Sequence record: PV764938.1
DNA: 64,000 nucleotides
Direction: 5' to 3' (one strand)
Shown: one piece after another, positions 3,903-55,178 of the stretch
Position numbering within the stretch: the first letter of the stretch is position 1
How the letters are laid out: each line of letters opens with the position of its first letter
The notes under the pieces: generated by a model
The model's database searches: none
The model's input: only the letters and a program-made list of their open reading frames with translations
Told to the model about the DNA's origin: nothing
Made by a program: the position numbers and the translations under genes

Positions 3903-4256
3903 ATGGATAAATCACTCGCTACAAAGCTGATCGACAAGCGCCTAATAAACGAATCAACCGAAGTGGTTGCACGTTATAAAGGCTCTAGTATCAGCGGCGA
4001 CACCAGCGTTGTAGGTACTGATATCTTCAGCGTTGATCAGGTACTTGGAGCAGATCAAGAAGGTGTAATCTTCATCCGGGTAACCTCTACACGGGACGGG
4101 TCGAAAAGAATTATCTGTCACCGAGATATCATCGAAATCGATGGTATGGAACCAAATAGGTTCGCAAGCGTTTACAACATTAAGGCCGATGGTGGTGATG
4201 CCGCAGTGGGCAAGCGTCGTGGACGCAAGCCGAAAGACCGCAGCAAAGTCGCTTGA
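3903..4256 (+). CDS. Hypothetical protein (basic C-terminal [11 protein letters not shown]-hook-like)
   Basis: ORF with upstream GGAG, fits the operon. Confidence 0.6.
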
Positions 4257-4296
4257 GCATAAATCGTACGAGAGCAACTCGTATAGGGAATATCAC

Positions 4297-5139
4297 ATGC
4301 AACAATATTTGGACCTTCTAAAACATGTGCTGGAGAACGGCACCGATCGTAGCGATCGCACCGGGACTGGTACCCGCAGCGTATTTGGATATCAGATGCG
4401 TTACGATCTTTCAGAGGGTTTTCCGGTACTGACGACCAAGAAACTGCACCTGCGCTCGATCATTCACGAACTCCTGTGGTTTCTCCAGGGCTCCGGTAAC
4501 ATTCAGTACCTGAAGGACAATGGTGTTACCATCTGGGACGAATGGGCAGACGAGTTCGGTGACCTTGGTCCCGTTTACGGTGTGCAATGGCGTAGCTGGC
4601 CAACATTCAAGGCGATTCGTGAGGAGAACGAACTCGGCTTCGGTGAATATCGGTATGAAACCGGAACTATTGATCAGATCGCAAAGCTCATCGAAGGCTT
4701 GAAGAAGAATCCGGATTCACGTCGACACATTGTTAGCGCGTGGAACCCCGCGCTGGTCGATGAAATGGCACTTCCACCGTGCCACACTATGTTCCAGTTC
4801 TACGTCGCAAATGGCAAGCTGAGCTGCCAACTGTATCAACGTTCCGCTGACATCTTCCTGGGTGTTCCCTTCAACATTGCGTCTTACGCTCTGTTCACGC
4901 ACATGGTCGCACAGGTCGTTGGGCTTGAGGTAGGTGACTTTGTTCACACGCTGGGCGATGCCCACATTTACCACAACCACTTCGAGCAGGCAAAGCTCCA
5001 GCTGACGCGTACTCCGAAGAAGCTCCCGACGATGGAAATCAACCCAGAGGTCAAGGACATTTTCGGATTCAAGTTCGAAGACTTCAAGCTGGTTGGCTAC
5101 GAAGCTGACCCATCAATCAAGGCACCGATTGCAGTATGA
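4297..5139 (+). CDS. thyA: Thymidylate synthase
   Basis: [41 protein letters not shown]; ATG 4297 begins MQQYLDLL. Confidence 0.97.
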
Positions 5140-43467: not shown

Positions 43468-44694
43468 ATGTCTACATTCCCTCTCCTCACCACTGTCGCT
43501 CCTCTTCTGGCTGCTGTGAAGGATATGCCCGAAATCGCTGTCCATCAGGATATCGAGAACGGCTATGGCTTTGTGATGTATCAGGTCGCTTTCGAGGAAA
43601 CCTTCGCGGATCCCGAACTCGCTGATACTCCTGAGGAGAGGGAACGTCGCCTTCTGGTGCGCGAAGCCCGTGGAGTCAAGTATGACTTGGCTACGCTTCG
43701 TGTCGTATCCCGCCCATACCATAAATTCTTCAACATCGGTGAGAAGCCTGAGACTCAGCCACACCTCGTGGATTGGTCTCGTCCTCATGTGATTCTGGAG
43801 AAGCTCGATGGCTCCATGTTGACTCCGCTTTGCACGGTAGATCGCCGTGTGCTTTGGATGACAAAGCGTGGTGTGACTGCGGTAGCTGGCACTGCTCAGC
43901 TATTCCTCAAGGATAATCCGCAGTATGAGAAGTTTTGCTTAGCGATGCACGACGCGGGTTGGACCCCGATTTTCGAATGGTGTACTCGTAAGCAGCGCAT
44001 TATCATCGACTACGGTGTTGATGACCGCATGATCCTCACGGGCATCCGAAACAACATTTCCGGTGAATACACTGGTTATGATGAAATGGTTGCGGTTGCT
44101 CACGATTGGAATCTGGATGTCGTACGGAAGCTTCCGTATACGGTAATGGACGTCAACAAGTTCATCGAGGATGTTCGTGGTCTCGAGGGCGAAGAAGGCT
44201 ACATCGTACGTTTCGACAACGGCGAAATGTATAAGATCAAGGGCGAATGGTACTGCCGTATCCACCGCACCTTCGACAACCTTCGCTTCGAGAAGGACGT
44301 GATTCGTCTAATCCTCTCGGGTGATCTTGACGATGCAAAGCCATTCTTGGTTCCGACGCTGATCAATGCGGTCGATCGTTTCCACAAGGATATGATCGCC
44401 GTGTTCCGCAAGTCGGCTTCCGAGTTGTATTGGTACGTGGTTGCTTCGAAGGATAATCTCAATGGATCCAAGAAGAAGTTTGCTGAACAAACAATTTCTG
44501 GTCCTTGGGAGCCCTACAAGGGTATCGCGTTCCATGCTTGGGATCGTGATATGACTGAAGAGGACATCTATGAGCGTTTGATCTCGGATATGATTTCTGC
44601 TACTGGTAGCCAGGGAACCGTTAACAAGGCGCGTTTCCTCATTGGCGGCCTTGAGTGGAAAGACTATTTGAATGACGACGGAGCAACGGATTAA
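43468..44694 (+). CDS. rnlA: RNA ligase, T4 Rnl1 family
   Basis: REARG, SRPYHKFFN, EKLDGS, FEW, EGYIVRF...YKIKG.WY. Confidence 0.88.
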   Translation: MSTFPLLTTVAPLLAAVKDMPEIAVHQDIENGYGFVMYQVAFEETFADPELADTPEERERRLLVREARGVKYDLATLRVVSRPYHKFFNIGEKPETQPHLVDWSRPHVILEKLDGSMLTPLCTVDRRVLWMTKRGVTAVAGTAQLFLKDNPQYEKFCLAMHDAGWTPIFEWCTRKQRIIIDYGVDDRMILTGIRNNISGEYTGYDEMVAVAHDWNLDVVRKLPYTVMDVNKFIEDVRGLEGEEGYIVRFDNGEMYKIKGEWYCRIHRTFDNLRFEKDVIRLILSGDLDDAKPFLVPTLINAVDRFHKDMIAVFRKSASELYWYVVASKDNLNGSKKKFAEQTISGPWEPYKGIAFHAWDRDMTEEDIYERLISDMISATGSQGTVNKARFLIGGLEWKDYLNDDGATD

Positions 44695-45529
44695 GCCAGC
44701 GATCCTACTGGAAACCCCTGAGGAAAAATCTTCAGAGGTTTTCGTAGCCAGCATCCGTCGGGTTCAAGAAGCTGCTGAACAGCTTGAAGTGCCCGTATTC
44801 TTCTCCAATCGTGATCCCATCGAGCGCGATGTTTGGGTTGATCCCGAACTAAGAGGCCGGCCTGTAATCGCTTACGGGTCGGTCCAATTCATCAGAGACA
44901 TTAAGGATCCAATATTCCCGGGAGCCTATGGCTATGCGGGCACGGATTGGCTCACTATGACCGCGCATGTTCCCAGGAAATGGTTGCTCAATTCGGATTT
45001 CATGATGACCTCATGGGGTGATCTCAAAAGGAATTTCGAATGGTGGAGCGATAAAGTCGACCCGAAAGGACTGTTCGTGCGCCCAAGTAGCGACAAGAAA
45101 GTTTTCGCGGCTCAGGTTATCCCACGAAGCGATTGGCAATTCGAGTTGAATCAGCTTGACGCGCTATCATCGGTTATGCCGGAAACCCTTTGCGTGGTCT
45201 CACCGGTTCATGCGTTTGGCGAGGAATATCGGTTTTGGATCGTTGATCGCAAGGTCGTTGGGTCCTCATATTACCCGACCTATGGTGTCACTTGGACCGA
45301 ACACAAACCCTTCCCTGACCAAAAGCTCCGTGAGTTGGCCGACAAGGTTGCCCAGCTTGAGTGGCAGCCTGATGCCTGCTATACCGTCGACCTAACATGC
45401 GACAGTAATGGAAATCCCAAGATCGTTGAAATGAATTCATTCTGCTGCTCGGGAGTCTACGACAGTGATTTCGTTACCATACTTGAAGCAGTGGTGGATC
45501 AGTCGAGTAGGGACTTTTACCCGGAGTAA
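44672..45529 (+). CDS. ATP-grasp protein (R2K clade / DUF4343-like)
   Basis: FVRPSSDKK.F, EYRFWIVDRKVV, YTVDL, IVEMNSF.CSGVY. Confidence 0.7.
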   Translation: MTTEQRIKPAILLETPEEKSSEVFVASIRRVQEAAEQLEVPVFFSNRDPIERDVWVDPELRGRPVIAYGSVQFIRDIKDPIFPGAYGYAGTDWLTMTAHVPRKWLLNSDFMMTSWGDLKRNFEWWSDKVDPKGLFVRPSSDKKVFAAQVIPRSDWQFELNQLDALSSVMPETLCVVSPVHAFGEEYRFWIVDRKVVGSSYYPTYGVTWTEHKPFPDQKLRELADKVAQLEWQPDACYTVDLTCDSNGNPKIVEMNSFCCSGVYDSDFVTILEAVVDQSSRDFYPE

Positions 45530-45908
45530 AGGTCGCTGGTTCTGGTATCAGGAACGATACAATCATATCAAGACTAGCTCTGGCATCGAAGTAACCTATT
45601 CATTCCACAAGATTGTTTCGGCTCGATGGCTCTTTCAGCTTTACCGGCGCAATGATAAGTGGGATTTCCTCACGCTACCTGATGATACCAAGTTTCTTAT
45701 CGGTCGGAGCGAGAGCAACATCTACAGGCCCGGTTTGGACTTTCTAGAGTATCTTGAGACCATGAAGGGTCCGGCGATCCTTGTGATTTCCACACCGTGG
45801 GAAGGTGACCCACTGTACGAATACTTTATGCAACACGATTGTGACAAGGCGTTCGTTGCTTTCGACAACAAACGTGAGCAAATGTTGTTTAAATTGGCCC
45901 ATACTTAG
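45465..45908 (+). CDS. Hypothetical protein (AxxFKL-terminal family; start uncertain)
   Basis: FDNKREQMLFKL; ends in TAG. Confidence 0.5.
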   Translation: MISLPYLKQWWISRVGTFTRSKGRWFWYQERYNHIKTSSGIEVTYSFHKIVSARWLFQLYRRNDKWDFLTLPDDTKFLIGRSESNIYRPGLDFLEYLETMKGPAILVISTPWEGDPLYEYFMQHDCDKAFVAFDNKREQMLFKLAHT

Positions 45909-45970
45909 GAAAGTCGCGTTTGACAAACTACGGTTCCTAGCGTAGGAAGAGATAACACTAGGAGCCGCAG

Positions 45971-47341
45971 ATGAAACTCTATAACAGCATGAGCAAACAA
46001 CTCGAGAAGTTTGTCCCAGCGGACGAACGTCGGGTGACCATGTATGTTTGCGGCCCCACAGTATACCAGGCCCCACATATCGGCAATCTTCGGCCGGCTG
46101 TGGTCTTCGATACGCTTTATCGATACCTGCGCGACAAATACGGGGCTGACCACGTCGTTTATGCGAGCAATTTCACGGACATCGACGATAAAATCATCAA
46201 AAAGGCCAACGACAATCGGACGTCCATCGACAATATCACGGAAGAAGCCATCGGCCATTACCAGCGTGATCTGCTCAGCCTGAACGTGTTGGGTCCGAGT
46301 GATCGTCCATATGCGACCAAGTATGTGGATGATATGATCCGGATGATCGATCGTCTCCAGGAAAACCATTACGCTTATGAGGTGAATGGGAACGTTTGGT
46401 TCTCCGTCGCCGATAGCAAGCACGTGAGTTTCCAACCGGATCGCGATAACGCAGGACTCGACGAAACATTTACGGCGGACAAAAAGGATCCCAGAGATTT
46501 TGCGCTGTGGAAAGCAGCAAAGCCAGGCGAACCCTTCTGGGAAAGCCCTTGGGGTCCAGGTCGTCCAGGCTGGCACATTGAATGCTCAGCTATGATTCGG
46601 GCAACTCTCGGTGACACCATCGACATTCACGGTGGTGGGTCCGATTTGATGTTCCCACATCATGAGGCCGAAAACGCTCAAAGCTTTGCCGTTACTGGAA
46701 AGCCCTTGGCCAACTATTGGCTTCACAATGGCATGATGAACATTGGGATGGCCAAAATCTCCAAAAGCCTCGGCAATTCCATCTCCATGCACGATCTCAA
46801 TCAGAGATTCCCAGGAGAATCCATTCGGTTGTTCCTGATGATGACACATTATCGGAGCACGATGAATTTTGATCATGGCTTGATCAGTGACGCTCATGCG
46901 CTGATGAATAAGTTGTATCGTGTGCTCTACAAGTACCGGGATGAACTGCTCGACCCCGCCGAAGTCGAACATGATGTGTTTGTGGTGAAGGCGTTCGAGC
47001 AGGACATGAATACTGCGGAAGTCATAACACGGCTTCAGCAGTTGGCCACAAAGGCCCTAAAGGAGTCCCATCCGTCGATTCGCCAGAAGCTGTTGACACA
47101 GTTGATCAAGGGCGGACAACTCCTGGGTGTACTCAACTACACACCAGAGGATTGGTTTCATATTGGTGTTAACCATGTTGAAATTGAGGAGTTGATTTCG
47201 GCACGGAACTTTGCTAGGGCGGCAAAGGATTGGCAACTTGCGGATATCTATCGCAAGTCGCTAAACGACAAAGGTGTCCATCTGGACGATCTCGATGGTG
47301 AGACGTTCTGGCGGACAATCAAAGGCGACGTTAGGCAATAG
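45971..47341 (+). CDS. cysS: Cysteinyl-tRNA synthetase
   Basis: MYVCGPTVY, HIGN, FTDIDDKII, DFALWK, GRPGWHIECSAM, HGGGSDLMFPHHE, KISKSLGN; AGGAG RBS. Confidence 0.95.
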   Translation: MKLYNSMSKQLEKFVPADERRVTMYVCGPTVYQAPHIGNLRPAVVFDTLYRYLRDKYGADHVVYASNFTDIDDKIIKKANDNRTSIDNITEEAIGHYQRDLLSLNVLGPSDRPYATKYVDDMIRMIDRLQENHYAYEVNGNVWFSVADSKHVSFQPDRDNAGLDETFTADKKDPRDFALWKAAKPGEPFWESPWGPGRPGWHIECSAMIRATLGDTIDIHGGGSDLMFPHHEAENAQSFAVTGKPLANYWLHNGMMNIGMAKISKSLGNSISMHDLNQRFPGESIRLFLMMTHYRSTMNFDHGLISDAHALMNKLYRVLYKYRDELLDPAEVEHDVFVVKAFEQDMNTAEVITRLQQLATKALKESHPSIRQKLLTQLIKGGQLLGVLNYTPEDWFHIGVNHVEIEELISARNFARAAKDWQLADIYRKSLNDKGVHLDDLDGETFWRTIKGDVRQ

Positions 47342-47355
47342 GAAGGAAAAACGTT

Positions 47356-47952
47356 ATGGAATTTATCGCAGGCTTGTCCTTTTTCTGGGTAGGCATCGTG
47401 TTCACGATTGCTGCTCTCGCAACTCTCATCTCCATCGGCACCAACAGCTACTGGTGGGCTTTCGGCATCGTCATCGGCACGATCGCATTCTCCCAGGGCA
47501 CCACTGACTACGGCATTCTCGATTTCGTCGCACGGAACTGGTACGGCACGCTGATCAGCACGGCCGTTTACGTTGCACTGGGTCTCGGCTGGGCTACGTT
47601 CGCATGGTTCCTGCACTTGACCAAGATCAAGGCCAAGTACCAAGAAGTACGTGAAAACTTGCTGCCGCAGTTCCTCGCATCCAAGAACGTCCAGGAACTC
47701 ACCGCCGATCTTCACGACGAGTTCCGCAAGTTCATCTACTCGAACGCCGGCACGGTTCTTCCGAAGGAACAGCTCGCAGTCAACAAGAGCGTCATGGTCG
47801 GTCAGGTTATCCTGTGGCCGTTCAAGCTCGGCGCGTTCGTCCTCGGTGACGCACTCAAGTACATCGTCGACGCATTCCTCGGACTGTTCGGCGGCTTCTT
47901 CAAGCGCATCCAGAAGTTCGTATTCCGTAACTTCCCGGAACTGCAGGCTTAA
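47356..47952 (+). CDS. Membrane protein (3-4 TM segments)
   Basis: Long hydrophobic N-terminal segments; ILWPF motif. Confidence 0.7.
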   Translation: MEFIAGLSFFWVGIVFTIAALATLISIGTNSYWWAFGIVIGTIAFSQGTTDYGILDFVARNWYGTLISTAVYVALGLGWATFAWFLHLTKIKAKYQEVRENLLPQFLASKNVQELTADLHDEFRKFIYSNAGTVLPKEQLAVNKSVMVGQVILWPFKLGAFVLGDALKYIVDAFLGLFGGFFKRIQKFVFRNFPELQA

Positions 47953-47982
47953 TCGGTCGGGGGCTTTGGCCCCCACCACTCT

Positions 47983-48058
47983 CGCGGTTTAGCTCAGTTG
48001 GTAGAGCAGCGATCTCTAAAATCGTTTGTCACGGGTTCGAGCCCCGTAACCGCGGCCA
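47983..48058 (+). tRNA. Amber-suppressor tRNA, anticodon CUA (tRNA-Trp-like scaffold)
   Basis: 76-nt cloverleaf: acceptor CGCGGTT/AACCGCG, D arm GCTC/GAGC, anticodon stem GCGAT/ATCGT with loop CT-CTA-AA (CTA at 48016-48018), T arm ACGGG-TTCGAGC-CCCGT, G73, encoded CCA. Confidence 0.93.
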
Positions 48059-48068
48059 AAGGTGAAGC

Positions 48069-48386
48069 ATGATCAGATGGACTGAAATGCCGCCGTTCGT
48101 TGCTGACCAGTTAAATCCACACTTTCGCGTTGGGGTTGAACTGAATGCAAAAGAAGTTATTCGGCGCTGGCCAGCTGATTTTGGTTTTGCAGTTTTTGAC
48201 AACGTCAAAACAAGCAACGACGGTTTCCAAAGCGTTTACACGCTTTCGAAAAATTTAGTTGGGTTCAGTGGGCGATTGGTAATAGCACCAATTGAAACTG
48301 GTGATGGGGCTAGATGCTTTTTGTTTGCCCTTGAAACTGATGAGGGCCGCAAATGGCTCACGATGATGAAATTAACATACGGGTGA
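48069..48386 (+). CDS. Hypothetical protein (distant AxxFKL-terminal family)
   Basis: AAGGTG RBS; KWLTMMKLTYG. Confidence 0.5.
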   Translation: MIRWTEMPPFVADQLNPHFRVGVELNAKEVIRRWPADFGFAVFDNVKTSNDGFQSVYTLSKNLVGFSGRLVIAPIETGDGARCFLFALETDEGRKWLTMMKLTYG

Positions 48387-48389
48387 TCT

Positions 48390-49142
48390 ATGGAACCGCT
48401 ATTCGACATTAACGGCTTGATGTTTTGGAGCCAGAAGGAAATTGCTCTGCGTGAGCGTTTCAAGGCCCAGATCGCCGAAGGAGTAGCAGAATTCCTCCAC
48501 GGTCAGAATCCCATGTTCCTGCAGAACTTCCTGCAGGTGGAAGCTCCGCTGCTTACACCACGTTCCGCATTGAATCCCAACTATACGGACGAGGATATTT
48601 GGGCACAGGAAACGCTGGAAGTCAGCGGCTCCCATGAGCTTGCGCTGCGGCCGGAAACTACTCCAGGTTCCTACACGTATGCGGTGCACCTGTTGAACTC
48701 CCACAGCGCCCACAAGCCTCCGATGGTCGTATGGCAGGCCGGTAAGAGCTTCCGGCGTGAAAACGAACAACCGTCCAAGCACATGCGGTTGAAGGAATTC
48801 TACCAACAGGAGTTCCAGTGCGTTTATGCGGCTGATACCATGAACGATTACCAGGAAGCCTCGCTGGAACCCATGCGCAAACTGCTTGGTGATATCATCG
48901 GCTTGCCCACGCGCATCGTAGAGTCCGATCGTTTGCCCTCCTATAGCAAGCGCACCATGGACATTGAAGTCGACAACGGCGACAAGTGGATGGAAGTCTG
49001 CTCGATTAGCCTGCGCACGGACTTCCCTGAAAAGTTTAAGTTCGTCCACAAGGGCGTTCAGAAGGAGAAGGATCTCCTCGTGCTTGAGATCGCCGTTGGT
49101 CTCGATCGCGTCGTATACAATTACCTGCAGAGGACGAAATAA
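48390..49142 (+). CDS. Class II aminoacyl-tRNA synthetase catalytic core, GlyRS(alpha2)-like, lacking an anticodon-binding domain
   Basis: Motif 1 VEAPLLTP, LRPETT, motif 2 QAGKSFRRE...RLKEFYQQE, MEVCSIS.R.DF, motif 3 EIAVGLDR; ends 10 aa after motif 3. Confidence 0.8.
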   Translation: MEPLFDINGLMFWSQKEIALRERFKAQIAEGVAEFLHGQNPMFLQNFLQVEAPLLTPRSALNPNYTDEDIWAQETLEVSGSHELALRPETTPGSYTYAVHLLNSHSAHKPPMVVWQAGKSFRRENEQPSKHMRLKEFYQQEFQCVYAADTMNDYQEASLEPMRKLLGDIIGLPTRIVESDRLPSYSKRTMDIEVDNGDKWMEVCSISLRTDFPEKFKFVHKGVQKEKDLLVLEIAVGLDRVVYNYLQRTK

Positions 49143-49567
49143 TGGGTCTCCAGAGTACACTCGGTACCATATTCGGTAAGGGTCTCGTGGCAAAGGGCAA
49201 TGATGCCGATTTCAACGAAGCCATTTACGATGGCTTCCAGAATACTGGCTGGGAATTTGGCGATGCTGATTCCGATCTCCAGACCAGTGGCGGACGGTTT
49301 GTGCCATTCGTGGCTGCCCTTCATTCGTTTCGGTTCGACGTTATGGGTTATGAATCGTCAAGCCCTGAGGAATGGGGTGCATTCTTCTACGGTGCGTTCA
49401 ATCTGTCGATGGCACAGGTCATTGCGGATAACATCACCGACGGTGTGCTTATTCTTTCGCATGAAGTCGAAGGCAACGGCACATCATACTTTTTCATCAC
49501 TCCCGGCAAGGCCGAAGAAGTCGATGTGGTCGACGCAATTCTCGGCATGAAAGGTCTCACCCGATGA
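49142..49567 (+). CDS. Hypothetical acidic protein
   Basis: TAATG coupling. Confidence 0.6.
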   Translation: MGLQSTLGTIFGKGLVAKGNDADFNEAIYDGFQNTGWEFGDADSDLQTSGGRFVPFVAALHSFRFDVMGYESSSPEEWGAFFYGAFNLSMAQVIADNITDGVLILSHEVEGNGTSYFFITPGKAEEVDVVDAILGMKGLTR

Positions 49568-49968
49568 GCAGCTCTGAAGTCATGGTGACTATCACTGCGC
49601 ATGAGGTGGAGTTCAAGGATCAGGAGCAAATGAACCTTGAACTGTTCATGCACTTCTCCGGTAAGGGTTGGTCATTCTCACACGATGAGAAAACTCCGAA
49701 CGGCACACCACTTGTCGTGTACTTCGACAAGGTCCTGAAATTCGCAGGTGGCGAATCCGGCAAGCCCACGGATTATGCTCAGACCTACGCGGACTGGTCC
49801 GAACAGACGAGCTCGATCATCTCCAAGTATATGACTGGCGGCATTCTTGTTCTTCAGTTCGTCTGGGAACAAGAGCGGGTCACGTATCACATCCTCAAGC
49901 CGAATTTTGTGGAGTCCCTCCAGCCCGAGGAAATCTTCAACTATTACTTGGCCGCAAAGGGCTACTAA
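49564..49968 (+). CDS. Hypothetical protein (weakly similar to the previous gene)
   Basis: ATGA coupling; GGILVLQF vs DGVLILSH. Confidence 0.6.
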   Translation: MSSSEVMVTITAHEVEFKDQEQMNLELFMHFSGKGWSFSHDEKTPNGTPLVVYFDKVLKFAGGESGKPTDYAQTYADWSEQTSSIISKYMTGGILVLQFVWEQERVTYHILKPNFVESLQPEEIFNYYLAAKGY

Positions 49969-50007
49969 CCACAGCGGATGACACGTCAGTGCTTCTGCAA
50001 ATGTGAG

Positions 50008-50039
50008 AAGGAACAGGGTTTGCGCTCTGTTCCTTTTTT
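50008..50039 (+). terminator. Rho-independent terminator
   Basis: AAGGAACAGGG-TTTGCG-CTCTGTTCCTT followed by a T-run. Confidence 0.75.
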
Positions 50040-50040
50040 A

Positions 50041-50070
50041 TTGACTCTGAGTATCCCAAACAAGTAGATT
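50041..50070 (+). promoter_or_regulatory. Sigma70-like promoter overlapping an ACTCTGAGT palindrome
   Basis: TTGACT-18 nt-TAGATT; palindrome 50044-50052. Confidence 0.55.
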
Positions 50071-50100
50071 GGAACAAATTTACTTAATTTGAGGATACCT

Positions 50101-50556
50101 ATGCCCGCCGTATTCATCCCCGAAGTCGGTATGTCTTACCGAGTCGTTGAAGAGTGGAAACCTATGCTGGATTGGTCTGATCGCAATCTCGTATTGTTCC
50201 GCAATCTCAAGCTCACCGGCACGAAGAAAATCAGCACCGGCACTTACTTCAAGTATGATCCAAAAACTCACACTCCAATTAGAGATGAGAATGGCGCATA
50301 CATTCGCGAGGAAGCTTTCGTGAATCGCACGGTTGCCAATCCATTGTTCCGGGATGATGATGGCAATTATGCTCCTGTTATGATCACGTTTCCCGTCGAT
50401 ACCGTATTGGAATTGACAAAGTACAAGACAGGTTATAACAATGACATCTATGCGGTTTGGTGGAAAATCACCAACTGTCCGGATGCCCGCTATATCAAGC
50501 GTGTCATCTCCGTTGAGCCGGATCAAATGACCGGTGCAGTTTTGGAACGAGTGTAA
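50101..50556 (+). CDS. Hypothetical protein
   Basis: GAGG RBS. Confidence 0.6.
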   Translation: MPAVFIPEVGMSYRVVEEWKPMLDWSDRNLVLFRNLKLTGTKKISTGTYFKYDPKTHTPIRDENGAYIREEAFVNRTVANPLFRDDDGNYAPVMITFPVDTVLELTKYKTGYNNDIYAVWWKITNCPDARYIKRVISVEPDQMTGAVLERV

Positions 50557-50975
50557 TGAAATTTCAAGTAGAAGATCGCGGCACTATCCTGAGCATCAAT
50601 CCAACGGTGCCTCACTGCATTATCAGTATCAGCGACACTCGTGGGGATCGCGCCGATCCCGCAGTCAATGATCTGACCCGCGATGTATTGTTCTTGAACT
50701 TTCACGACACAAATGAGCCGAAGCCCGGAATGGATCTGTTCACGGTTCGGCATGCGATCGACGTCCTCAATTTTTACGAGCGTTACAAGGGCGAAGTCGG
50801 CTTGTTCGTGGCCCACTGTAACGCTGGTATGTGCAGGAGTCCCGCAGTAATCGCGGCCCTGCAGAAGATTCATACGGGCAACGATGACAACTGGTTCCGA
50901 ACCAAGACACCAAACTCCCTTGTCTACCGCACAATCTTGGGAGAAGCATACGAGCGCGGACTCCTTACCGTATGA
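50556..50975 (+). CDS. Protein-tyrosine/dual-specificity phosphatase-like protein
   Basis: IISIS, LNFHD, HCNAGMCRS (CX5R). Confidence 0.8.
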   Translation: MKFQVEDRGTILSINPTVPHCIISISDTRGDRADPAVNDLTRDVLFLNFHDTNEPKPGMDLFTVRHAIDVLNFYERYKGEVGLFVAHCNAGMCRSPAVIAALQKIHTGNDDNWFRTKTPNSLVYRTILGEAYERGLLTV

Positions 50976-50979
50976 GCTT

Positions 50980-51276
50980 ATGATTTCGGATTCCGAATGG
51001 GATCCATTTTTGGATAAGTTCTTCCCGCATCGCGTGGATTTGTACTTGAAGCATCTCGAAGGCTACAACGTGGTCAGCGCGATCTTCGAAGCACATGAAG
51101 CATTTGGTCCTGCACGTTTCCGTACCCGTTTCTTAACGACTCTTCACGTCTACGTATTGGATACGCTTGAGGAGAAATCCTATTACAGCCGGACTGGGAC
51201 TTGGTTCATGGTCCACAACGAATTTTATTTTGCGAACCACAACGATGCGGTTCTTTTCAAGTTGAGACACGGATGA
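50980..51276 (+). CDS. Hypothetical protein (AxxFKL-terminal family)
   Basis: FYFANHNDAVLFKLRHG. Confidence 0.6.
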   Translation: MISDSEWDPFLDKFFPHRVDLYLKHLEGYNVVSAIFEAHEAFGPARFRTRFLTTLHVYVLDTLEEKSYYSRTGTWFMVHNEFYFANHNDAVLFKLRHG

Positions 51277-51584
51277 ACGAAAAAGTCAAATACATGGTCA
51301 AGCGGCTTCCCATTAAGCTCCGCCTCAACAATACGTTGATGAAAAACAAGGGCCATCCCCAGGAGTTCCTCACATTTGAAAACCTGCTGTGGAACATCTA
51401 CGGACCACCGATGATCAAGCTGGAAGTCTCTCGGTTCTCGCCCTCCGGCATGTACTGGAAAAAGAATCCCGATGGTATTTGGGCACGAGTCCGGAACGAG
51501 TTCTACTTCAAAGATGCTCGGACTGCTGCGCTTGCACGGCTTCACATGCCGGCGGATTTTGAAATTACCAAAAGATTAATTTGA
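51273..51584 (+). CDS. Hypothetical protein (AxxFKL-terminal family)
   Basis: FYFKDARTAALARL; ATGA coupling. Confidence 0.6.
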   Translation: MNEKVKYMVKRLPIKLRLNNTLMKNKGHPQEFLTFENLLWNIYGPPMIKLEVSRFSPSGMYWKKNPDGIWARVRNEFYFKDARTAALARLHMPADFEITKRLI

Positions 51585-51615
51585 CAAGATAGGTACAATT
51601 GTATTAAATAGTGGC

Positions 51616-51714
51616 ATGAATAAGAAATACACCCACTTGTAGCTTCATCGGTCTCGTTCTCCGCCATTTGTGCTTGAGTTAATCGCACGAATTTCAAATG
51701 GAGAACGACAATGA
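51616..51714 (+). promoter_or_regulatory. Putative leader ORF (MNKKYTHL-amber-...ERQ-opal) overlapping an RBS-occluding hairpin
   Basis: TTGACA 51581, TTAAAT/TAAATA 51604-51610, ATG 51616, TAG 51640-51642, TGA 51712-51714 overlapping ATG 51711; stem TCGTTCTC(CGC)CATTTG / CAAATGGAGAACGA. Confidence 0.4.
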
Positions 51715-52025
51715 CCAATATCAATTCAAACATAGACCTAGACGACGATCTCGATGACGACGAGGATGACTACCTATTCGACGATGATGAATGGGAAGAC
51801 TCTGCATTTCCAGCGAGAATCGCAACCGAATATCCAGGTTGGCACCAAATGAAGATCACCCGTTTCACCGGCGGAACGCTGGCGGAGATCAAAGAATGGT
51901 GCGACGAGAATATTACTCGTGGACTCTGGAAACAAGTAGGTTGGAATTCTGGTTGCTCTTATAGCGTAGGTATAGTAGTAGAACACGCTAGAGACGCCAT
52001 GCTATTCAAACTGCGCTGGAGCTAA
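51711..52025 (+). CDS. Hypothetical protein with an acidic N-terminus (AxxFKL-terminal family)
   Basis: GGAG RBS; EIKEWCDEN..RG.W, DAMLFKLRWS. Confidence 0.7.
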   Translation: MTNINSNIDLDDDLDDDEDDYLFDDDEWEDSAFPARIATEYPGWHQMKITRFTGGTLAEIKEWCDENITRGLWKQVGWNSGCSYSVGIVVEHARDAMLFKLRWS

Positions 52026-52027
52026 AT

Positions 52028-52423
52028 GTGACTGACGAGTATTTGGCAAAACCAATCGTGCCACAGGCCAAAGAAAAGGAACTCAACTTGAAGTTCCGAA
52101 AGGGTGTCCTGTATACGGCGGGTGAGGTCATTACTTGCATTCACAACTATTTGCCGTATCGGGTTCCCCTCAAGGAACTGGGGATCAGCGAAGAACGGAC
52201 ACAGCATGATGATCCGAATGGTCCTCCCGGCAATGCTCGGTTCGAACGGACTGAACGCCTGAGGGAGTTCCTCACCAACATTACGCCGGATCTGATGACT
52301 GACGTCGGAAAGGGTCACAAGCGTTACGAACACAACAAAGCCGGCTCTTGGGCAATCATCGTCGGCTGGGTCTATCTGAGGGATCCGAAACTGATTGCAA
52401 TTTTAAAGCTGGCTTTCGGTTGA
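52028..52423 (+). CDS. Hypothetical protein (AxxFKL-terminal family)
   Basis: GTG start; YLRDPKLIAILKLAFG. Confidence 0.6.
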   Translation: MTDEYLAKPIVPQAKEKELNLKFRKGVLYTAGEVITCIHNYLPYRVPLKELGISEERTQHDDPNGPPGNARFERTERLREFLTNITPDLMTDVGKGHKRYEHNKAGSWAIIVGWVYLRDPKLIAILKLAFG

Positions 52424-52490
52424 CAAATAAACCAGCATAGCTTAAATAGAGAACACTGGTCATGGTGATCAGCTTTTAGGAGAAAACGAA

Positions 52491-52985
52491 ATGAAGTATT
52501 AGGTTGAAGAAAAGCTGCGTGTTCGGGCCTACAACGGTCTGAACGAGACTTCCCTCCCTGCGGCTACGCCCGCATATTTCGGCGACGACGAGTCGTTTGA
52601 AGAAGCCAGCAATAAGCTTCGCATTTACAGCATCATTCGGGGCGATCTCGAAATGACCGCTGGTAAGCTTGCCTCCCAGGCATGCCACGCTGCGAAGAAC
52701 TGCGCTATCATCGCCCAGCAGTACGAGCCTCAGTTGCTCGAGACTTATCAGGGCCCTGATTTCATCGGTACTCAAATCATCCTCAAGGCGAAGAATGAAG
52801 CCGCAATCCTGAAGGCCTACGAAGCCGCTAAGGAAGCAAACCTCATCACCTCGCTCATTGTTGATGAAAAGCATGTCATGCTCCCGCACTTCGACGGCAA
52901 CCCCATCATTACCGCTCTCGGTATTGGTCCTTGCACTCGTGAACAGGCGCATCACATCACCAAGCGGTTTGAGGCTGTACGATGA
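52491..52985 (+). CDS. pth2: Peptidyl-tRNA hydrolase type 2 with an in-frame amber codon at position 4 (readthrough gene or pseudogene)
   Basis: AGGAG-N8-ATG AAG TAT TAG GTT..., in frame with IYSIIRGDLEMTAGKLASQACHA, IILKA, LIVDE, TALGIGP; the track ORF at 52653 starts inside the conserved first motif. Confidence 0.8.
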
Positions 52986-53305
52986 ACCCGCGCTGGAAGA
53001 AAGCAATGGACGCCTATAAAGCGGTCATTTGCGCACCAAAAGAACAAGGCGAAGATGGTTGGTCTCCGCCTCCGACGTCGGAACAATGGCGCGACAAAAA
53101 GTGGAGCAGAGAGCTCCGCAAGATGTGGCCCGAATATACGAGCATCCGACTCGAAGATATCCGATTCTATTCGGAGAAGCAAAAGTGGTGCAAAGAAAAC
53201 GCCCAGTTCTTCTGGGTAGCTGGTAATCAGCAGATGTGGTATTTTTCCGATCGGAACTCCGCGCTGCTTTTCAAATTGTCCTTTGGAGGGAATGTAGAAC
53301 TATGA
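52982..53305 (+). CDS. Hypothetical protein (AxxFKL-terminal family)
   Basis: QKWCKEN, WYFSDRNSALLFKLSFGG. Confidence 0.65.
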   Translation: MNPRWKKAMDAYKAVICAPKEQGEDGWSPPPTSEQWRDKKWSRELRKMWPEYTSIRLEDIRFYSEKQKWCKENAQFFWVAGNQQMWYFSDRNSALLFKLSFGGNVEL

Positions 53306-53832
53306 GTGCTTTTGGTATGAAACCCACTTTCAAGACCCGCGACGAATACAAGGCATGGCGCAAGACGTGGGCCGCACTTTACGCGGAAGTCAGCGAGCGT
53401 ATTCGTAAGCTCAAGCTGGCAACCAAGTCCACCCAGCGTACTGGCGAGTCCGCAGCAATGCAGAACAAACTCCGTCAGGAACGCGCAATGGGCGCAAAGG
53501 CGATGACTCTGTTGAGCGAGGCGAAGATTCGTTGGCAGAACATCCAGGAAATGAAGCGTGGCATTGCTGAGCAGCACGCAACGTTTCCGTTGGAGATCGA
53601 GAACGTCCGTAACATGGACTTCCACTTCAACAAGAAGCACTTGGAGTTCCCTGAGGTTGTCCCCATGTGGGTCCTCAAGGCGAAGGGCGCTACCTACTAC
53701 TTGAATCACATCGATTGTCAGACTCCTTGGACTACCCGAGAAACCCCTGACAACCCGAGCACCAAGGGTTCGATCCGAATCAAGCGCGGTAACATTAGCA
53801 TCAGTGCAGATGCTACGGCGACGATTTCCTGA
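53302..53832 (+). CDS. Hypothetical protein
   Basis: GGAGG RBS, ATGA coupling; FHFNKKH...PMWVLKAKG..YY. Confidence 0.65.
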   Translation: MSAFGMKPTFKTRDEYKAWRKTWAALYAEVSERIRKLKLATKSTQRTGESAAMQNKLRQERAMGAKAMTLLSEAKIRWQNIQEMKRGIAEQHATFPLEIENVRNMDFHFNKKHLEFPEVVPMWVLKAKGATYYLNHIDCQTPWTTRETPDNPSTKGSIRIKRGNISISADATATIS

Positions 53833-53891
53833 ATTTCTCCGTGGGGGCCAAACTGGTTGACTCCCACGGAATCCTATTGTAATGTGGTTGC

Positions 53892-55178
53892 ATGATGAAA
53901 AAGAAAATACCACTCCACAGTCTCGTGCTTATGGTTGGCCCCTCGGGAGCCGGCAAAAGCACTGTGACCTCCGCACATTTTGCGGACTACGAAATCGTAA
54001 GCAGTGACAGTCTACGTCATGAGCTCGTAGGTGATTTCCAGCGTCAGGACATTAACCCGCTGGTTTTCAATGAGCTGCATGATCGTGTTCGCACAAAGCT
54101 TGCGATCGGTGAGCGCGTGGTCGTTGATGCAACCCATCTGCGCAAGGCAGATCGTATGGGCGTCGTAAACATCGGTGTTCAGCTTGGGGTTCCGGTCTAC
54201 TACATCGTGGTAAACCGTCCGCTGGAAGAGAAGCTTGCTACGGCAGGCTGGCGTGCCGGCGTTCCTGGCCTCATCGAGCGTCACGACGAAACGTTCCGAA
54301 ACAACGAGCGTGAGATCCTTCTGGGCGATAACGTGGCTACGGTCATCGATACTCGCAAGGAAGAGTTCGAAGCGGTCGTGAAGGCTCCAGGTGGCGATGT
54401 TGCCGACCATATCTTGGGACTTGGTTTCAAGGGCGTTATGGTTCTCGGAGACATTCACGGAATGCGTGAACGCCTCAAGAGTGCCATCGATTGGGCCATC
54501 ACGCGCAACCTTTACATGATCTTCCTGGGCGATGTGATCGACTACGGTCCGCATAGCCTGGAATGCGTAGACATTGTCTACGATATCATGACTCGCGGTC
54601 GCGGATCGATGACGATCGGCAATCACGAAAAGAAGATTGAACGTTGGATCACGCAGGATCGGGCCTTCCAGGAGAAGGGTACTCCGATCAAGCTGCACTT
54701 GAGCGATGGAAATCGCGCAACGACCAACCTTGTGCAGGCTTTGAGCCAGGGTGACCGCACCAAGTTTGAATGCAAGTTCACAACGATGGTGAATCTGGCT
54801 CGAAACCACATCCTGCTTGGTGAGAACTTCTTGCTCACGCATGGTGGTGCAGAACCCGAAATGTTCCGTATCACCGACCATCGCTTGGGTAAGCGTTTGG
54901 AAGGTATCGCCCTTTACGGCGAAACCGACAACACGGTTCAGCGCACCGACGGATATCCGAACCGAGTTTATAACTGGGTCAACAGGATTCCCGAGGGCAA
55001 GCAGGTCATCGTAGGCCACGACATCCGCAGCACGCTCAAGCCGCTGGTAGAAACCGGTACGCGAGGCGGAACTGCTACTTTCATGGACACTGGTTCCGGT
55101 AAGGGAGGACACCTCACTACGGCCCACGTTATCCATGAGAATGGCAACTGGGAAATCAAGGCGTTCACTGCCCACTAA
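53892..55178 (+). CDS. pnkP: Polynucleotide kinase-phosphatase (bacterial Pnkp kinase + metallophosphoesterase, no ligase domain)
   Basis: LVLMVGPSGAGKST, SSDSLR, VVDATHL; GDIHG, GDVIDYGP, GNHE, HGG, VGHD, DTG. Confidence 0.85.
   Translation: MMKKKIPLHSLVLMVGPSGAGKSTVTSAHFADYEIVSSDSLRHELVGDFQRQDINPLVFNELHDRVRTKLAIGERVVVDATHLRKADRMGVVNIGVQLGVPVYYIVVNRPLEEKLATAGWRAGVPGLIERHDETFRNNEREILLGDNVATVIDTRKEEFEAVVKAPGGDVADHILGLGFKGVMVLGDIHGMRERLKSAIDWAITRNLYMIFLGDVIDYGPHSLECVDIVYDIMTRGRGSMTIGNHEKKIERWITQDRAFQEKGTPIKLHLSDGNRATTNLVQALSQGDRTKFECKFTTMVNLARNHILLGENFLLTHGGAEPEMFRITDHRLGKRLEGIALYGETDNTVQRTDGYPNRVYNWVNRIPEGKQVIVGHDIRSTLKPLVETGTRGGTATFMDTGSGKGGHLTTAHVIHENGNWEIKAFTAH

What the first reader, a model, noticed from the sequence alone, without database searches (positions are those of the whole stretch)
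48390..49142. Minimal GlyRS-like class II synthetase with no anticodon-binding domain, next to the suppressor tRNA
Seen: 250 aa with motifs 1, 2 and 3 and the GlyRS(alpha2)-type LRPET and GKSFRxE signatures; the protein ends 10 residues after motif 3. It starts 331 nt downstream of the CUA tRNA. Established: alpha2-type GlyRS reads the C35-C36 anticodon through a C-terminal domain absent here, and stand-alone class II cores can act on non-tRNA substrates. Inference: it may be an anticodon-blind synthetase that charges the CUA tRNA (a natural orthogonal pair), recharges damaged tRNAs, or is an amino-acid ligase. The tRNA lacks the Gly acceptor identity (G1-C72), so cognate pairing is not assured.
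Basis: partly seen in the sequence, partly recalled or inferred. Interest (0 to 1): 0.72.

Follow-up and report, generated by a model that had tools for sequence, protein, structure and literature searches.

The report
Minimal glycine-activating synthetase core of huge phages
This phage gene encodes a stripped-down 250-residue relative of glycyl-tRNA synthetase with an intact glycine/ATP site but no anticodon reader; it belongs to a large uncharacterised family in huge phages and rhizobia, and the amber-suppressor tRNA next to it is a one-lineage neighbour, not a shown partner.

Summary
ORF 48390-49142 (+) encodes 250 aa, a class IIa synthetase core that ends 10 residues after motif 3. It starts 331 nt after a CUA tRNA (47983-48058).

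The window is Sinorhizobium phage Phosso (469 kb), where the gene is mislabelled 'serine-tRNA synthetase'. The predicted structure matches the catalytic domain of alpha2 GlyRS, without its insertion domain, linker and anticodon domain. Thirteen of the 15 residue positions lining the glycyl-adenylate site carry the Mycobacterium tuberculosis GlyRS residue. Twelve are invariant and three vary in one to ten of 171 relatives.

The family is large: over 1400 proteins, nearly all 210-260 aa. It occurs in huge phages and on alphaproteobacterial chromosomes. Across phage lineages the recurrent neighbour is tRNA-Gly, not a CUA tRNA. CUA adjacency occurs in the Phosso-like syntenic lineage and in one distant locus, inside a tRNA repair and maintenance module. 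Phosso also has a 196-aa mini-HisRS beside tRNA-His.

Best reading: a minimal, anticodon-blind GlyRS that acts on tRNA-Gly acceptor ends (confidence about 0.5). The orthogonal-pair idea with the CUA tRNA is not excluded (about 0.1). No biochemistry exists for this family.

The parts
48390..49142 (+). Mini-GlyRS: a 250-aa stand-alone class IIa catalytic core (GenBank XYS97415.1, mislabelled 'serine-tRNA synthetase')
   Evidence: ORF; Pfam PF00587; AlphaFold2 model with pLDDT 91.7; VIA Z 23.6 to M. tuberculosis GlyRS residues 18-339 with 239 residues aligned; GenBank annotation
48648..48662 (+). R87-P-E-T-T91; E89 is the first of the three glutamates that hold the glycine amino group (Mtb Glu165)
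   Evidence: Alignments; residue roles from PMC12208437; E in 171/171 relatives
48741..48818 (+). Motif 2 and its loop (G118..Q143). Equivalents: R122=Arg197, E124=Glu199, F137=Phe212, Q139=Gln214, E141=Glu216, Q143=Glu218
   Evidence: The loop variant differs between lineages
48924..48947 (+). Lid segment S179-D-R-L-P-S-Y-S186; Y185 = Mtb Tyr264 of the [AS]HY[AS] lid motif
49083..49118 (+). Motif 3 region L232-E-I-A-V-G-L-D-R240...; E233=Glu324, A235=Ala326 (blocks side chains), R240=Arg331
   Evidence: Alignment to N. equitans GlyRS; residue roles; conservation
47983..48058 (+). tRNA with anticodon CUA (amber suppressor type): C1-G72, G73, 5-nt variable loop, CCA encoded
   Evidence: ARAGORN; Rfam tRNA 67 bits; sequence
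45971..47341 (+). Full-length CysRS (456 aa, ends in TAG). A conserved neighbour in the Phosso-like lineage, and in the opposite order in loci L004-L008
   Evidence: NCBIfam cysS 450 bits against a cut-off of 340; synteny; stop codon
47356..47952 (+). 198-aa protein of unknown function between CysRS and the tRNA, weakly conserved in the lineage
48069..48386 (+). 105-aa ORF between the tRNA and the mini-GlyRS. It is a variable cassette, not conserved, and is replaced by 347 other bases in soil relatives
43468..44694 (+). T4 Rnl1-type RNA ligase (part of the tRNA repair module)
   Evidence: Pfam RNA_lig_T4_1, E 5.7e-33; synteny
44672..45529 (+). R2K-clade ATP-grasp protein; also found near the gene in XbC2 (L036) and L188
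52653..52985 (+). PTH2-type peptidyl-tRNA hydrolase, about 70% conserved in the lineage; also lies next to the gene in the distant locus L121
53892..55178 (+). Kinase (AAA_33) fused to a calcineurin-type phosphoesterase; a Pnkp-like RNA end-healing enzyme

Best explanation
The gene encodes a minimal glycyl-tRNA synthetase: the alpha2-GlyRS catalytic domain without its insertion domain, linker hairpin and anticodon-binding domain.

Proposed mechanism:
1. It binds ATP and glycine in a pocket essentially identical to that of bacterial alpha2 GlyRS and forms glycyl-AMP. This step is strongly inferred from conservation.
2. It then most likely transfers glycine to the 3' end of tRNA-Gly, phage-encoded or host. 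With no anticodon domain, it can use only the acceptor end: CCA, the discriminator and the top base pairs. This step is inferred from genomic linkage to tRNA-Gly genes, and from the established fact that acceptor microhelices suffice for specific glycylation and histidylation.

In Phosso-like phages the gene sits in a tRNA repair and maintenance module (Rnl1-type ligase, Pnkp-like end healer, PTH2, CysRS). Its likely role is therefore to keep Gly-tRNA available during infection regardless of the state of the anticodon loop or of the host GlyRS.
For: Fold:
- The model is confident (pLDDT 91.7).
- It aligns over its whole length to Mtb GlyRS residues 18-339 (Z 23.6, rmsd 2.9 A).
- GlyRS ranks first by Foldseek and by HMM.

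Active site:
- Thirteen of the 15 positions that line glycyl-AMS/AMP in Mtb GlyRS (roles from PMC12208437) carry the Mtb residue here. At the other two, Thr209 is Leu and Thr330 is Asp.
- Twelve of the 15 are invariant in 171/171 unique relatives. Two vary in one relative each, and the Thr209 position in ten.
- All 15 are invariant in the 77 bacterial copies.
- The buried, protonated Glu218 of Mtb GlyRS is an invariant Gln here.

Family:
- 1432 homologues.
- 117 clusters at 50% identity with E<1e-30, nearly all 210-260 aa.
- About 60% identity between distant phages, which points to strong constraint.

tRNA linkage:
- In phage loci with tRNAs, tRNA-Gly lies within 2 kb in 12 of 19. The next most frequent isotype, Ile, is found in 5.
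- 24 of 71 tRNAs within 2 kb are Gly, against 6 of 126 further away.
- The Gly-linked loci are scattered over at least five places in the tree.
- In L181 a tRNA-Gly ends 1 nt before the start codon.

Parallel case:
- Phosso's 196-aa mini-HisRS lies 275 nt from tRNA-His.
- Its family has tRNA-His within 2 kb in 14 of 20 loci.

No other GlyRS:
- No other GlyRS-like gene is found in the whole Phosso genome.

Context:
- The conserved neighbours are tRNA repair and maintenance genes.

Precedent:
- Minimal class II cores can acylate tRNA-Gly (PMC11602164).
Against: - There is no biochemical evidence for any member of the family.
- The protein lacks every GlyRS element outside the core that grips tRNA, so its affinity and specificity for tRNA are unknown.
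- The family is acidic (median pI 5.5).
- The tRNA immediately upstream varies widely between loci (Ala, Glu, Tyr, Arg, Ser, Ile, CUA), so adjacency alone is weak evidence.
- The Gly enrichment is not corrected for shared ancestry.
- Bacterial homologues and the Caulobacter and Brevundimonas phage homologues have no tRNA gene nearby.
- The N-terminal 80 residues have no sequence match to GlyRS.
Confidence: 0.5

Rival explanations
1. Natural orthogonal pair. The anticodon-blind mini-GlyRS charges the adjacent G73 CUA tRNA, so the module inserts glycine at UAG.
For: - The CUA tRNA lies 53-1875 nt upstream on the same strand in every member of the Phosso-like lineage.
- A CUA tRNA also lies 1.7 kb away, beside PTH2, in the distant locus L121.
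- By analogy, the mini-HisRS and other mini-GlyRS genes sit next to their cognate tRNAs.
- Phosso and the L022 genome each hold two CUA tRNAs of different discriminator class: G73 next to the gene and A73 in the arrays. This suggests two different charging routes.
- The Phosso-like lineage has its own motif-2 loop variant.
Against: - The association amounts to essentially one evolutionary event plus L121.
- Only 2 of 120 viral loci with this kind of CUA tRNA have the gene.
- Most family members have no CUA tRNA nearby.
- The acceptor stems of the linked tRNAs vary (G1-C72 or C1-G72; C2-G71, U2-A71 or G2-C71). Phosso's own tRNA is the inverse of the Gly set.
- Phosso's motif-2 loop does not share the lineage variant.
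- TAG is an ordinary stop in this genome: it ends the CysRS gene, and coding density is 92% under the standard code.
- The tRNA is linked equally tightly to CysRS.
Confidence: 0.1
2. tRNA-independent glycine ligase. Gly-AMP is passed to a non-tRNA acceptor (carrier protein thiol, small molecule or protein side chain). Known ABD-less class II homologues of this kind are aa:[carrier protein] ligases, AsnA and EpmA.
For: - The protein has no tRNA-binding appendages.
- Bacterial copies are lone genes in unrelated metabolic contexts with no tRNA nearby.
- The Bradyrhizobium glycine:[carrier protein] ligase is a comparable ABD-less glycine activator and a strong structural match (Z 20.4).
- An R2K ATP-grasp ligase recurs nearby in three lineages.
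Against: - No carrier protein, phosphopantetheinyl transferase or any other protein partner is conserved next to the gene in phages or bacteria.
- Sequence affinity is to GlyRS, not to the SerRS-like ligases (E 0.2 for Bll0957).
- This reading does not explain the linkage to tRNA-Gly genes, or the parallel mini-HisRS/tRNA-His linkage.
Confidence: 0.2
3. Not a glycyl transferase in vivo. It is either a dinucleotide polyphosphate (Ap4A-type) synthase, as reported for human GlyRS, or a regulatory or decoy protein that binds glycine, ATP or tRNA ends.
For: - The human GlyRS-Ap4A complex is among the top structural matches (2zt5, Z 22.3).
- The ATP site is fully conserved.
Against: - The glycine-specific residues (three Glu plus Ala235) are as invariant as the ATP site. 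This is unexpected if glycine were irrelevant.
- No signalling or effector gene is linked to it.
Confidence: 0.05

Closest known systems
Bacterial alpha2 (class IIa) glycyl-tRNA synthetase, e.g. M. tuberculosis / M. thermoresistibile GlyRS (8u2p, 8slg) and T. thermophilus GlyRS (1ati, 1b76)
   Same: - Same catalytic fold over the whole 250 residues (Z about 23; 22-23% identity to the mycobacterial enzymes, 20% to T. thermophilus).
- Motifs 1-3 are present.
- Thirteen of the 15 glycyl-adenylate and ATP site positions carry the same residue, including the Glu triad, the Ala that excludes side chains, the lid Tyr and both class II arginines.
   Different: - Lacks the insertion domain (Mtb residues 88-143), the beta-hairpin linker (341-369) and the HGTP anticodon-binding domain (370-463).
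- Glu218 is Gln, Thr209 is Leu and Thr330 is Asp.
- The N-terminal 80 residues are unrecognisable by sequence.
- Scores far below the GlyRS equivalog cut-offs.
Amino acid:[carrier protein] ligases of Rhizobiales (Bradyrhizobium Bll0957, glycine:[carrier protein] ligase)
   Same: - A stand-alone class II core of about 300 aa without a tRNA-binding domain.
- It activates glycine.
- It occurs in rhizobia.
- It is a good structural match (Z 20.4).
   Different: - That family descends from methanogen-type SerRS and is encoded next to its carrier protein.
- Here the sequence affinity is to GlyRS, no carrier-protein gene is linked, and tRNA-Gly genes are linked instead.
Class II urzymes and natural minimal GlyRS-B alpha fragments (Patra et al. 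2024, PMC11602164); HisRS and AlaRS catalytic fragments that charge microhelices
   Same: Minimal class II cores that activate glycine and acylate tRNA or acceptor helices without reading the anticodon.
   Different: - Those are engineered fragments or fragments of uncertain provenance, from the unrelated alpha2beta2 GlyRS type.
- This is a widespread natural family of the alpha2 type, under purifying selection.
PylRS catalytic domain (PylSc / delta-N PylRS) with tRNA-Pyl(CUA)
   Same: A class II core of about 270 aa that ignores the anticodon and serves a CUA tRNA. This is the model behind the 'orthogonal pair' idea.
   Different: - Only marginal sequence similarity (20 bits against a cut-off of 178).
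- The pocket here is glycine-type.
- The neighbouring tRNA is a canonical cloverleaf, not tRNA-Pyl-like; ARAGORN's 'Pyl' label reflects the anticodon only.
NCBI 'aminoacyl--tRNA ligase-related protein' of Rhizobium, Phenylobacterium and Devosia (e.g. WP_027684495.1)
   Same: The same family: 52-57% identity, the same length and the same invariant site residues.
   Different: These copies are chromosomal, with no tRNA, repair-gene or phage context. They are uncharacterised.

Membership tests
alpha2-type (class IIa) glycyl-tRNA synthetase | Class II catalytic fold with motifs 1, 2 and 3 | tested here: met
   Pfam PF00587 above its cut-off; invariant motifs; model pLDDT 91.7; GlyRS is the top fold match
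alpha2-type (class IIa) glycyl-tRNA synthetase | Glycine pocket: three glutamates, a small residue blocking the side-chain position, and the lid Tyr | tested here: met
   E89, E141, E233, A235 and Y185 align to Mtb Glu165, Glu216, Glu324, Ala326 and Tyr264. All are invariant in 171/171 relatives
alpha2-type (class IIa) glycyl-tRNA synthetase | Insertion domain after the first core strand (acceptor-arm clamp) | tested here: not met
   239 of 250 residues align to Mtb residues 18-339, a span of 322 residues. The Mtb insertion domain (88-143) has no counterpart. Only a short variable loop at residues 58-84 takes its place
alpha2-type (class IIa) glycyl-tRNA synthetase | C-terminal HGTP anticodon-binding domain that reads C35/C36 | tested here: not met
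   The protein ends 10 residues after motif 3. There is no PF03129 hit. The structural alignment stops at Mtb residue 339
alpha2-type (class IIa) glycyl-tRNA synthetase | Score above the curated equivalog cut-off | tested here: not met
   PRK04173 61 bits vs 312; TIGR00389 36 vs 243
alpha2-type (class IIa) glycyl-tRNA synthetase | Glycylates tRNA-Gly | not testable with these tools
   The only evidence is indirect: enrichment of tRNA-Gly genes next to family members
amino acid:[carrier protein] ligase (Bll0957 type) | Descent from SerRS-like (methanogen-type) sequences | tested here: not met
   Sequence match to Bll0957 is E 0.2-0.24, against 3e-10 for GlyRS. Structural Z 20.4 is below the GlyRS value of 23.6
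amino acid:[carrier protein] ligase (Bll0957 type) | Adjacent carrier-protein gene | tested here: not met
   No protein neighbour is conserved across phage lineages or across bacterial genera
PylRS catalytic domain | Match to PylS_Cterm above its cut-off | tested here: not met
   20 bits vs 178
HisZ / EpmA(PoxA) / AsnA class II paralogues | Sequence membership | tested here: not met
   No Pfam, NCBIfam or PDB hit to these families at E<=1. A weak HisRS hit has E 2e-8, below GlyRS
uncharacterised 'aminoacyl--tRNA ligase-related protein' family (phage plus alphaproteobacterial minimal cores) | Full-length similarity, a length of 210-260 aa and the shared invariant residues | tested here: met

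The most novel reading that the evidence does not exclude
Huge phages carry a set of anticodon-blind mini-synthetases (at least Gly and His) that recognise tRNAs by the acceptor end alone. In the Phosso-like lineage the mini-GlyRS has been coupled to a dedicated G73 CUA tRNA. Together they would form a self-contained, naturally orthogonal UAG-to-glycine suppression module, working alongside PTH2 and the tRNA repair enzymes.
Probability: 0.1. Interest if true: 0.9.

Novelty: new variant of a known kind. Interest (0 to 1): 0.64.

Why it matters
If these 250-aa proteins glycylate tRNA, they would be the smallest natural class IIa synthetases known to me. That would be a living counterpart of the engineered 'urzymes', and of Schimmel's acceptor-stem 'operational code'. 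They would be maintained under strong selection in hundreds of huge phages and fixed in rhizobial chromosomes.

This would bear on three questions:
- How much of a synthetase is needed for specific charging.
- How phages keep translation running when hosts attack tRNAs or synthetases.
- Whether compact anticodon-independent enzymes can be used for genetic-code engineering.

If the acceptor turns out not to be tRNA, the family is a new glycine ligase with an unknown, ubiquitous substrate.

There is also a practical point. The GenBank label 'serine-tRNA synthetase' is wrong. The automatic label 'glycyl-tRNA synthetase' overstates what is known.

Tried and rejected
- **Partner subunits.** The ORFs flanking the gene (105 aa upstream; 141 and 134 aa downstream) are not conserved even within the lineage, have no Pfam or PHROG match, and the upstream one is swapped out in soil relatives. 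Rejected as partners.
- **Isotype of the CUA tRNA.** Similarity to about 200 phage tRNAs and to Phosso's own 62 tRNAs gives no consistent nearest isotype (Gly-GCC, Lys, Met, Val, all 70-79%). Inconclusive.
- **Motif-2 loop against tRNA context.** The CUA-linked lineage has its own loop variant, but Phosso itself does not. This cannot be separated from phylogeny.
- **Profile of the N-terminal 80 residues against PDB.** No match. Equivalence to the GlyRS N-terminal tRNA loop rests only on the structural alignment starting at Mtb residue 18.
- **'tRNA-Ala' calls next to Phenylobacterium homologues.** These are 94-nt predictions inside GC-rich coding sequence and are taken as false positives.
- **Search for in-frame TAG read-through genes in Phosso.** Dominated by antisense and adjacent-gene artefacts, so no conclusion beyond the finding that TAG is a real stop.
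- **Longer family members (300-350 aa).** The extra residues carry no recognisable domain, so there is no informative fusion.
- **RNA evidence.** No RNA-seq of this phage exists. One soil metatranscriptome contig matches only a 32-nt stretch of tRNA that it shares with the array-type CUA tRNA.
- **Promoter and terminator scan.** At chance level.
- **Literature.** Six searches on this family found no paper describing it.
Full report
**Identity of the window.** The window is 100% identical to Sinorhizobium phage Phosso (PV764938.1, 469,473 bp, circular, host S. meliloti). Window position 1 corresponds to record position 124,001. The target ORF is XYS97415.1, annotated 'serine-tRNA synthetase'. 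The neighbouring tRNA is annotated 'tRNA-OTHER'.

**Check of the observation.**
- ORF 48390-49142 (+) encodes 250 aa.
- A canonical tRNA with anticodon CUA lies at 47983-48058 (+), 331 nt upstream.
- Its acceptor stem is C1-G72, G2-C71, C3-G70. The discriminator is G73 and CCA is encoded.
- The protein has LRPET, GKSFRRE (motif 2) and GLDR (motif 3), and stops 10 residues after the motif 3 arginine.
- Pfam finds only the class II core domain (PF00587, 1.9e-12) and no anticodon-binding domain.
- The best NCBIfam models are GlyRS, but at 61 bits against a cut-off of 312.
- The best solved-structure sequences are mycobacterial GlyRS.

**Structure.** An AlphaFold2 model built on 37 relatives is confident (pLDDT 91.7, pTM 0.89).
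- Foldseek ranks alpha2 GlyRS first (E about 1e-15), followed by ProRS and SerRS.
- VIA-align superposes 239 of the 250 residues on M. tuberculosis GlyRS residues 18-339 (Z 23.6, rmsd 2.9 A, 23% identity).
- In that enzyme the catalytic domain is residues 1-87 and 144-340. The insertion domain is 88-143, the linker hairpin 341-369 and the anticodon domain 370-463 (PMC12208437).
- The phage protein is therefore the bare catalytic domain, with the insertion domain reduced to a short variable loop and everything after the core removed.
- Other class II cores score nearly as well: ProRS Z 21, and the Bradyrhizobium glycine:[carrier protein] ligase Z 20.4. Fold alone does not decide the subfamily. 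The sequence and the active site do.

**Active site.** The Mtb GlyRS paper lists the residues that contact glycyl-AMS and AMP. Through the HMM alignments they map as follows:

| Mtb GlyRS | Phosso protein |
|---|---|
| Glu165 | E89 |
| Arg197 | R122 |
| Glu199 | E124 |
| Thr209 | L134 |
| Phe212 | F137 |
| Gln214 | Q139 |
| Glu216 | E141 |
| Glu218 | Q143 |
| Tyr264 | Y185 |
| Glu284 | E202 |
| Arg291 | R209 |
| Glu324 | E233 |
| Ala326 | A235 |
| Thr330 | D239 |
| Arg331 | R240 |

- Thirteen of the 15 positions carry the Mtb residue. Thr209 is Leu and Thr330 is Asp.
- In an alignment of 171 unique family members, twelve of the positions are identical in all 171. E124 and R240 each differ in one sequence, and L134 in ten.
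- All 15 are invariant in the 77 bacterial members.
- The buried Glu218, described as pKa-shifted (protonated), is an invariant Gln, an isosteric replacement.
- Together with the alanine that blocks any side chain, this is strong evidence that the family binds ATP and glycine and forms glycyl-AMP. It remains an inference, since no assay exists.

**Extent of the family.**
- The word-indexed search finds 1432 homologues. The best 120 are 240-330 aa and 57-99% identical (all but the top hit at most 72%), and many sit on contigs of 300-860 kb.
- The exhaustive profile search finds 117 clusters at 50% identity with E<1e-30 and 261 with E<1e-10. Nearly all are 210-260 aa.
- Cultured phages with a copy include Xanthomonas XbC2, Brevundimonas phages and Caulobacter CcrBL9-like phages. 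Two phage genomes of about 635 kb also have one.
- Longer members carry an unrecognisable insert at the site of the GlyRS insertion domain.
- PHROGs has no family for it.
- Six literature searches on the family found no description of it. Sources name it variously 'glycyl-tRNA synthetase', 'RNA synthetase class II', 'aminoacyl-tRNA synthetase' or 'hypothetical'.

**Bacterial copies.**
- A scan of one genome per species found 111 chromosomal homologues at 52-57% identity and the same length. They occur in Rhizobium (many species), Phenylobacterium, Devosia, Mesorhizobium, Shinella, Labrys and others.
- NCBI calls them 'aminoacyl--tRNA ligase-related protein'. The R. leguminosarum cluster has 381 members on contigs of 4.5-5.4 Mb.
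- Their contexts are ordinary and unrelated to each other: DD-carboxypeptidase and isochorismatase in R. leguminosarum, DUF459 and an oxidoreductase in another Rhizobium group, acyl-CoA dehydrogenase and thiolase in Phenylobacterium.
- No neighbour is shared across genera and there is no tRNA gene nearby.
- In the family tree the bacterial copies form one well-supported group (SH-aLRT 98), together with a few phage sequences, nested among the much more diverse phage sequences.
- The root is a midpoint only, so the direction of transfer is not established.

**What sits next to the gene in phages.** I examined 185 non-identical loci.
- No protein-coding neighbour is conserved across lineages. 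The recurrent neighbours are tRNA genes.
- A CUA tRNA upstream on the same strand occurs only in the Phosso-like lineage: the window and its near-identical relative L125, L002, L009, L012, L014, L015, L016 (and the near-identical L139), L020, L022, L127/L129 and L143.
- In that lineage the whole region is syntenic: AAA ATPase, Rnl1-type RNA ligase, R2K ATP-grasp, CysRS, a small protein, tRNA(CUA), variable ORFs, mini-GlyRS, a phosphatase-like protein, PTH2, and a kinase-phosphoesterase.
- In the tree these form one clade (support 99). Phosso itself is unresolved.
- The only other case is L121, a distant relative (45% identity). There an A73 CUA tRNA lies 1.7 kb downstream on the opposite strand, just upstream of a PTH2 gene.
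- Conversely, of 120 viral loci holding a CUA tRNA with the same D-arm and anticodon loop, only two hold the gene, and both belong to the known lineage.

**The tRNA-Gly signal.**
- Among phage loci with at least one non-CUA tRNA within 2 kb, tRNA-Gly is present in 12 of 19. The next isotype, Ile, is present in 5.
- Of the tRNAs within 2 kb, 24 of 71 are Gly, against 6 of 126 further away (Fisher 1e-7).
- A per-locus simulation that used the overall Gly frequency, itself inflated by the sampling, gives p 0.02.
- The Gly-linked loci fall in at least five separate places in the tree and have different gene orders. In L181 a tRNA-Gly(GCC) ends one base before the start codon.
- These tRNA-Gly genes carry the standard bacterial identity set (G1-C72, C2-G71, mostly U73).
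- The statistics are not corrected for shared ancestry. The tRNA immediately upstream is often another isotype. The signal is therefore real but moderate.

**A parallel case in the same genome.**
- Phosso record 4096-4686 encodes a 196-aa 'histidyl-tRNA synthetase', 275 nt downstream of tRNA-His(GTG).
- It matches HisRS (PF13393, 2e-21). It aligns to T. thermophilus HisRS residues 38-156 and 243-319, so it lacks the HisRS insertion domain and the anticodon domain.
- It is not a close paralogue of the mini-GlyRS.
- Its family occurs in 29 viral loci, several on the same contigs as mini-GlyRS genes.
- tRNA-His lies within 2 kb in 14 of the 20 loci that have any tRNA there.
- The ESM Atlas also lists viral clusters of 190-220-aa class II cores of other subtypes.
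- Minimal class II cores placed beside their cognate tRNA genes thus look like a general feature of huge phages.
- From established knowledge: Gly and His are two of the classic systems in which acceptor-stem microhelices are charged specifically. This makes enzymes without an anticodon domain mechanistically plausible for exactly these amino acids.

**Phosso's translation inventory.** I reassembled the whole record from fetched pieces.
- It holds 62 tRNAs, mostly in arrays at 420-469 kb and 1-26 kb. These include three tRNA-Gly genes and a second CUA tRNA with A73.
- The L022 genome shows the same pair of CUA tRNAs: G73 beside the gene and A73 elsewhere.
- The annotated synthetases are the mini-HisRS, CysRS, the mini-GlyRS and a full-length ThrRS.
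- The family profile finds no other GlyRS-like ORF in the genome.
- TAG is not reassigned. It terminates the well-delimited CysRS gene and about 15% of long ORFs in the window, and coding density under the standard code is 92%.
- The hosts are alphaproteobacteria, whose own GlyRS is (from general knowledge) the unrelated alpha2beta2 type. The mini enzyme therefore cannot simply borrow a host subunit.

**Interpretation.**
- Shown: the fold, the missing domains, the conservation of the glycyl-adenylate site, the size and distribution of the family, and the pattern of neighbours.
- Inferred: that the enzyme makes Gly-AMP (high confidence).
- Inferred: that the acceptor is the 3' end of tRNA-Gly, recognised through the acceptor end (moderate confidence, from the tRNA-Gly and mini-HisRS/tRNA-His linkages and from precedent; PMC11602164).
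- Inferred: that in Phosso-like phages it works with the repair ligase, the end-healing enzyme and PTH2 to keep tRNAs usable during infection (lower confidence).
- One attractive speculation needs no anticodon reading. PTH2 would strip blocked or acetylated aminoacyl groups, and the mini-GlyRS would then recharge the freed tRNA-Gly. It is speculation only.
- Huge phages are already known to carry many synthetases. In one reported case a phage CRISPR spacer targets the host GlyRS (PMC7162821).

It is not excluded.
- For: the linkage is conserved throughout one lineage. The linked tRNA always has G73 while the array copy has A73. Other mini-synthetases sit by their cognate tRNAs.
- Against: it is essentially one evolutionary event. 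The acceptor stems of the linked tRNAs are not conserved, and Phosso's is the inverse of the Gly set. The tRNA is as tightly linked to CysRS. The family as a whole does not travel with CUA tRNAs.
- I put it at about 0.1.

**Verdict.** This is a real and well-conserved but uncharacterised family: a minimal, anticodon-blind, glycine-activating class IIa enzyme. It is a new variant of a known kind. It is interesting for synthetase evolution and for phage-host conflict over tRNAs, and it is directly testable with standard biochemistry.

Noticed in passing
outside the window: Phosso record 4096-4686 (locus L325:4096-4686, +), with tRNA-His at L325:3746-3820: A 196-aa 'mini-HisRS': a HisRS catalytic core lacking the insertion and anticodon domains, 275 nt downstream of tRNA-His(GTG). 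Its family (29 viral loci) has tRNA-His within 2 kb in 14 of the 20 loci that have any tRNA there.
   Followed up: partly
outside the window: Phosso record 446731-446806 (L327:27258-27333); also L279:382-457 in the L022 genome: A second CUA tRNA per genome, sitting in the tRNA arrays, with discriminator A73. The copy beside the mini-GlyRS has G73. The D and anticodon arms are nearly identical; the acceptor and T arms differ. This suggests two identity classes of amber suppressor.
   Followed up: partly
whole Phosso genome (reassembled): ARAGORN finds 62 tRNAs covering 19 amino acids plus two CUA tRNAs, but no tRNA-Tyr. The GenBank annotation in the pieces read lists none either.
   Followed up: no
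window 43468-55178: A conserved tRNA repair and maintenance module surrounds the finding: T4 Rnl1-type RNA ligase (43468-44694), R2K ATP-grasp (44672-45529), CysRS, PTH2 (52653-52985), and a kinase plus calcineurin-type phosphoesterase (53892-55178). Phosso has three annotated peptidyl-tRNA hydrolase genes in all.
   Followed up: partly
window 48063-48390: The 105-aa ORF between the tRNA and the mini-GlyRS is a swappable cassette. Related phages in soil metagenomes keep both flanks but have 347 unrelated bases here.
   Followed up: partly
loci L004-L008 (10001-12027): In another phage lineage the mini-GlyRS is followed 5 nt later by a CysRS gene, with no tRNA. The mini-GlyRS/CysRS pairing therefore recurs in the opposite order.
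   Followed up: no
window 47957-47979: A G+C-rich hairpin (GGGGGC-TTTG-GCCCCC) lies between the stop of the 198-aa ORF and the first base of the tRNA, with no T-run. It may be a processing signal rather than a terminator.
   Followed up: no
loci L039-L118 (e.g. L083:7992-8741): Chromosomal homologues (52-57% identity) are fixed in Rhizobium, Phenylobacterium, Devosia and relatives, and are named 'aminoacyl--tRNA ligase-related protein'. They are single-gene insertions in unrelated housekeeping contexts.
   Followed up: partly
window 48390-49142: The GenBank product name 'serine-tRNA synthetase' does not fit. The closest synthetase by sequence, structure and active site is GlyRS.
   Followed up: yes
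Phosso record 380146-380946 (L357:10673-11473): Two adjacent annotated genes are in the same frame, separated only by a TAG and one codon. This is a possible read-through pair in a genome with two amber suppressors. It was not examined further, and many such pairs are chance.
   Followed up: no
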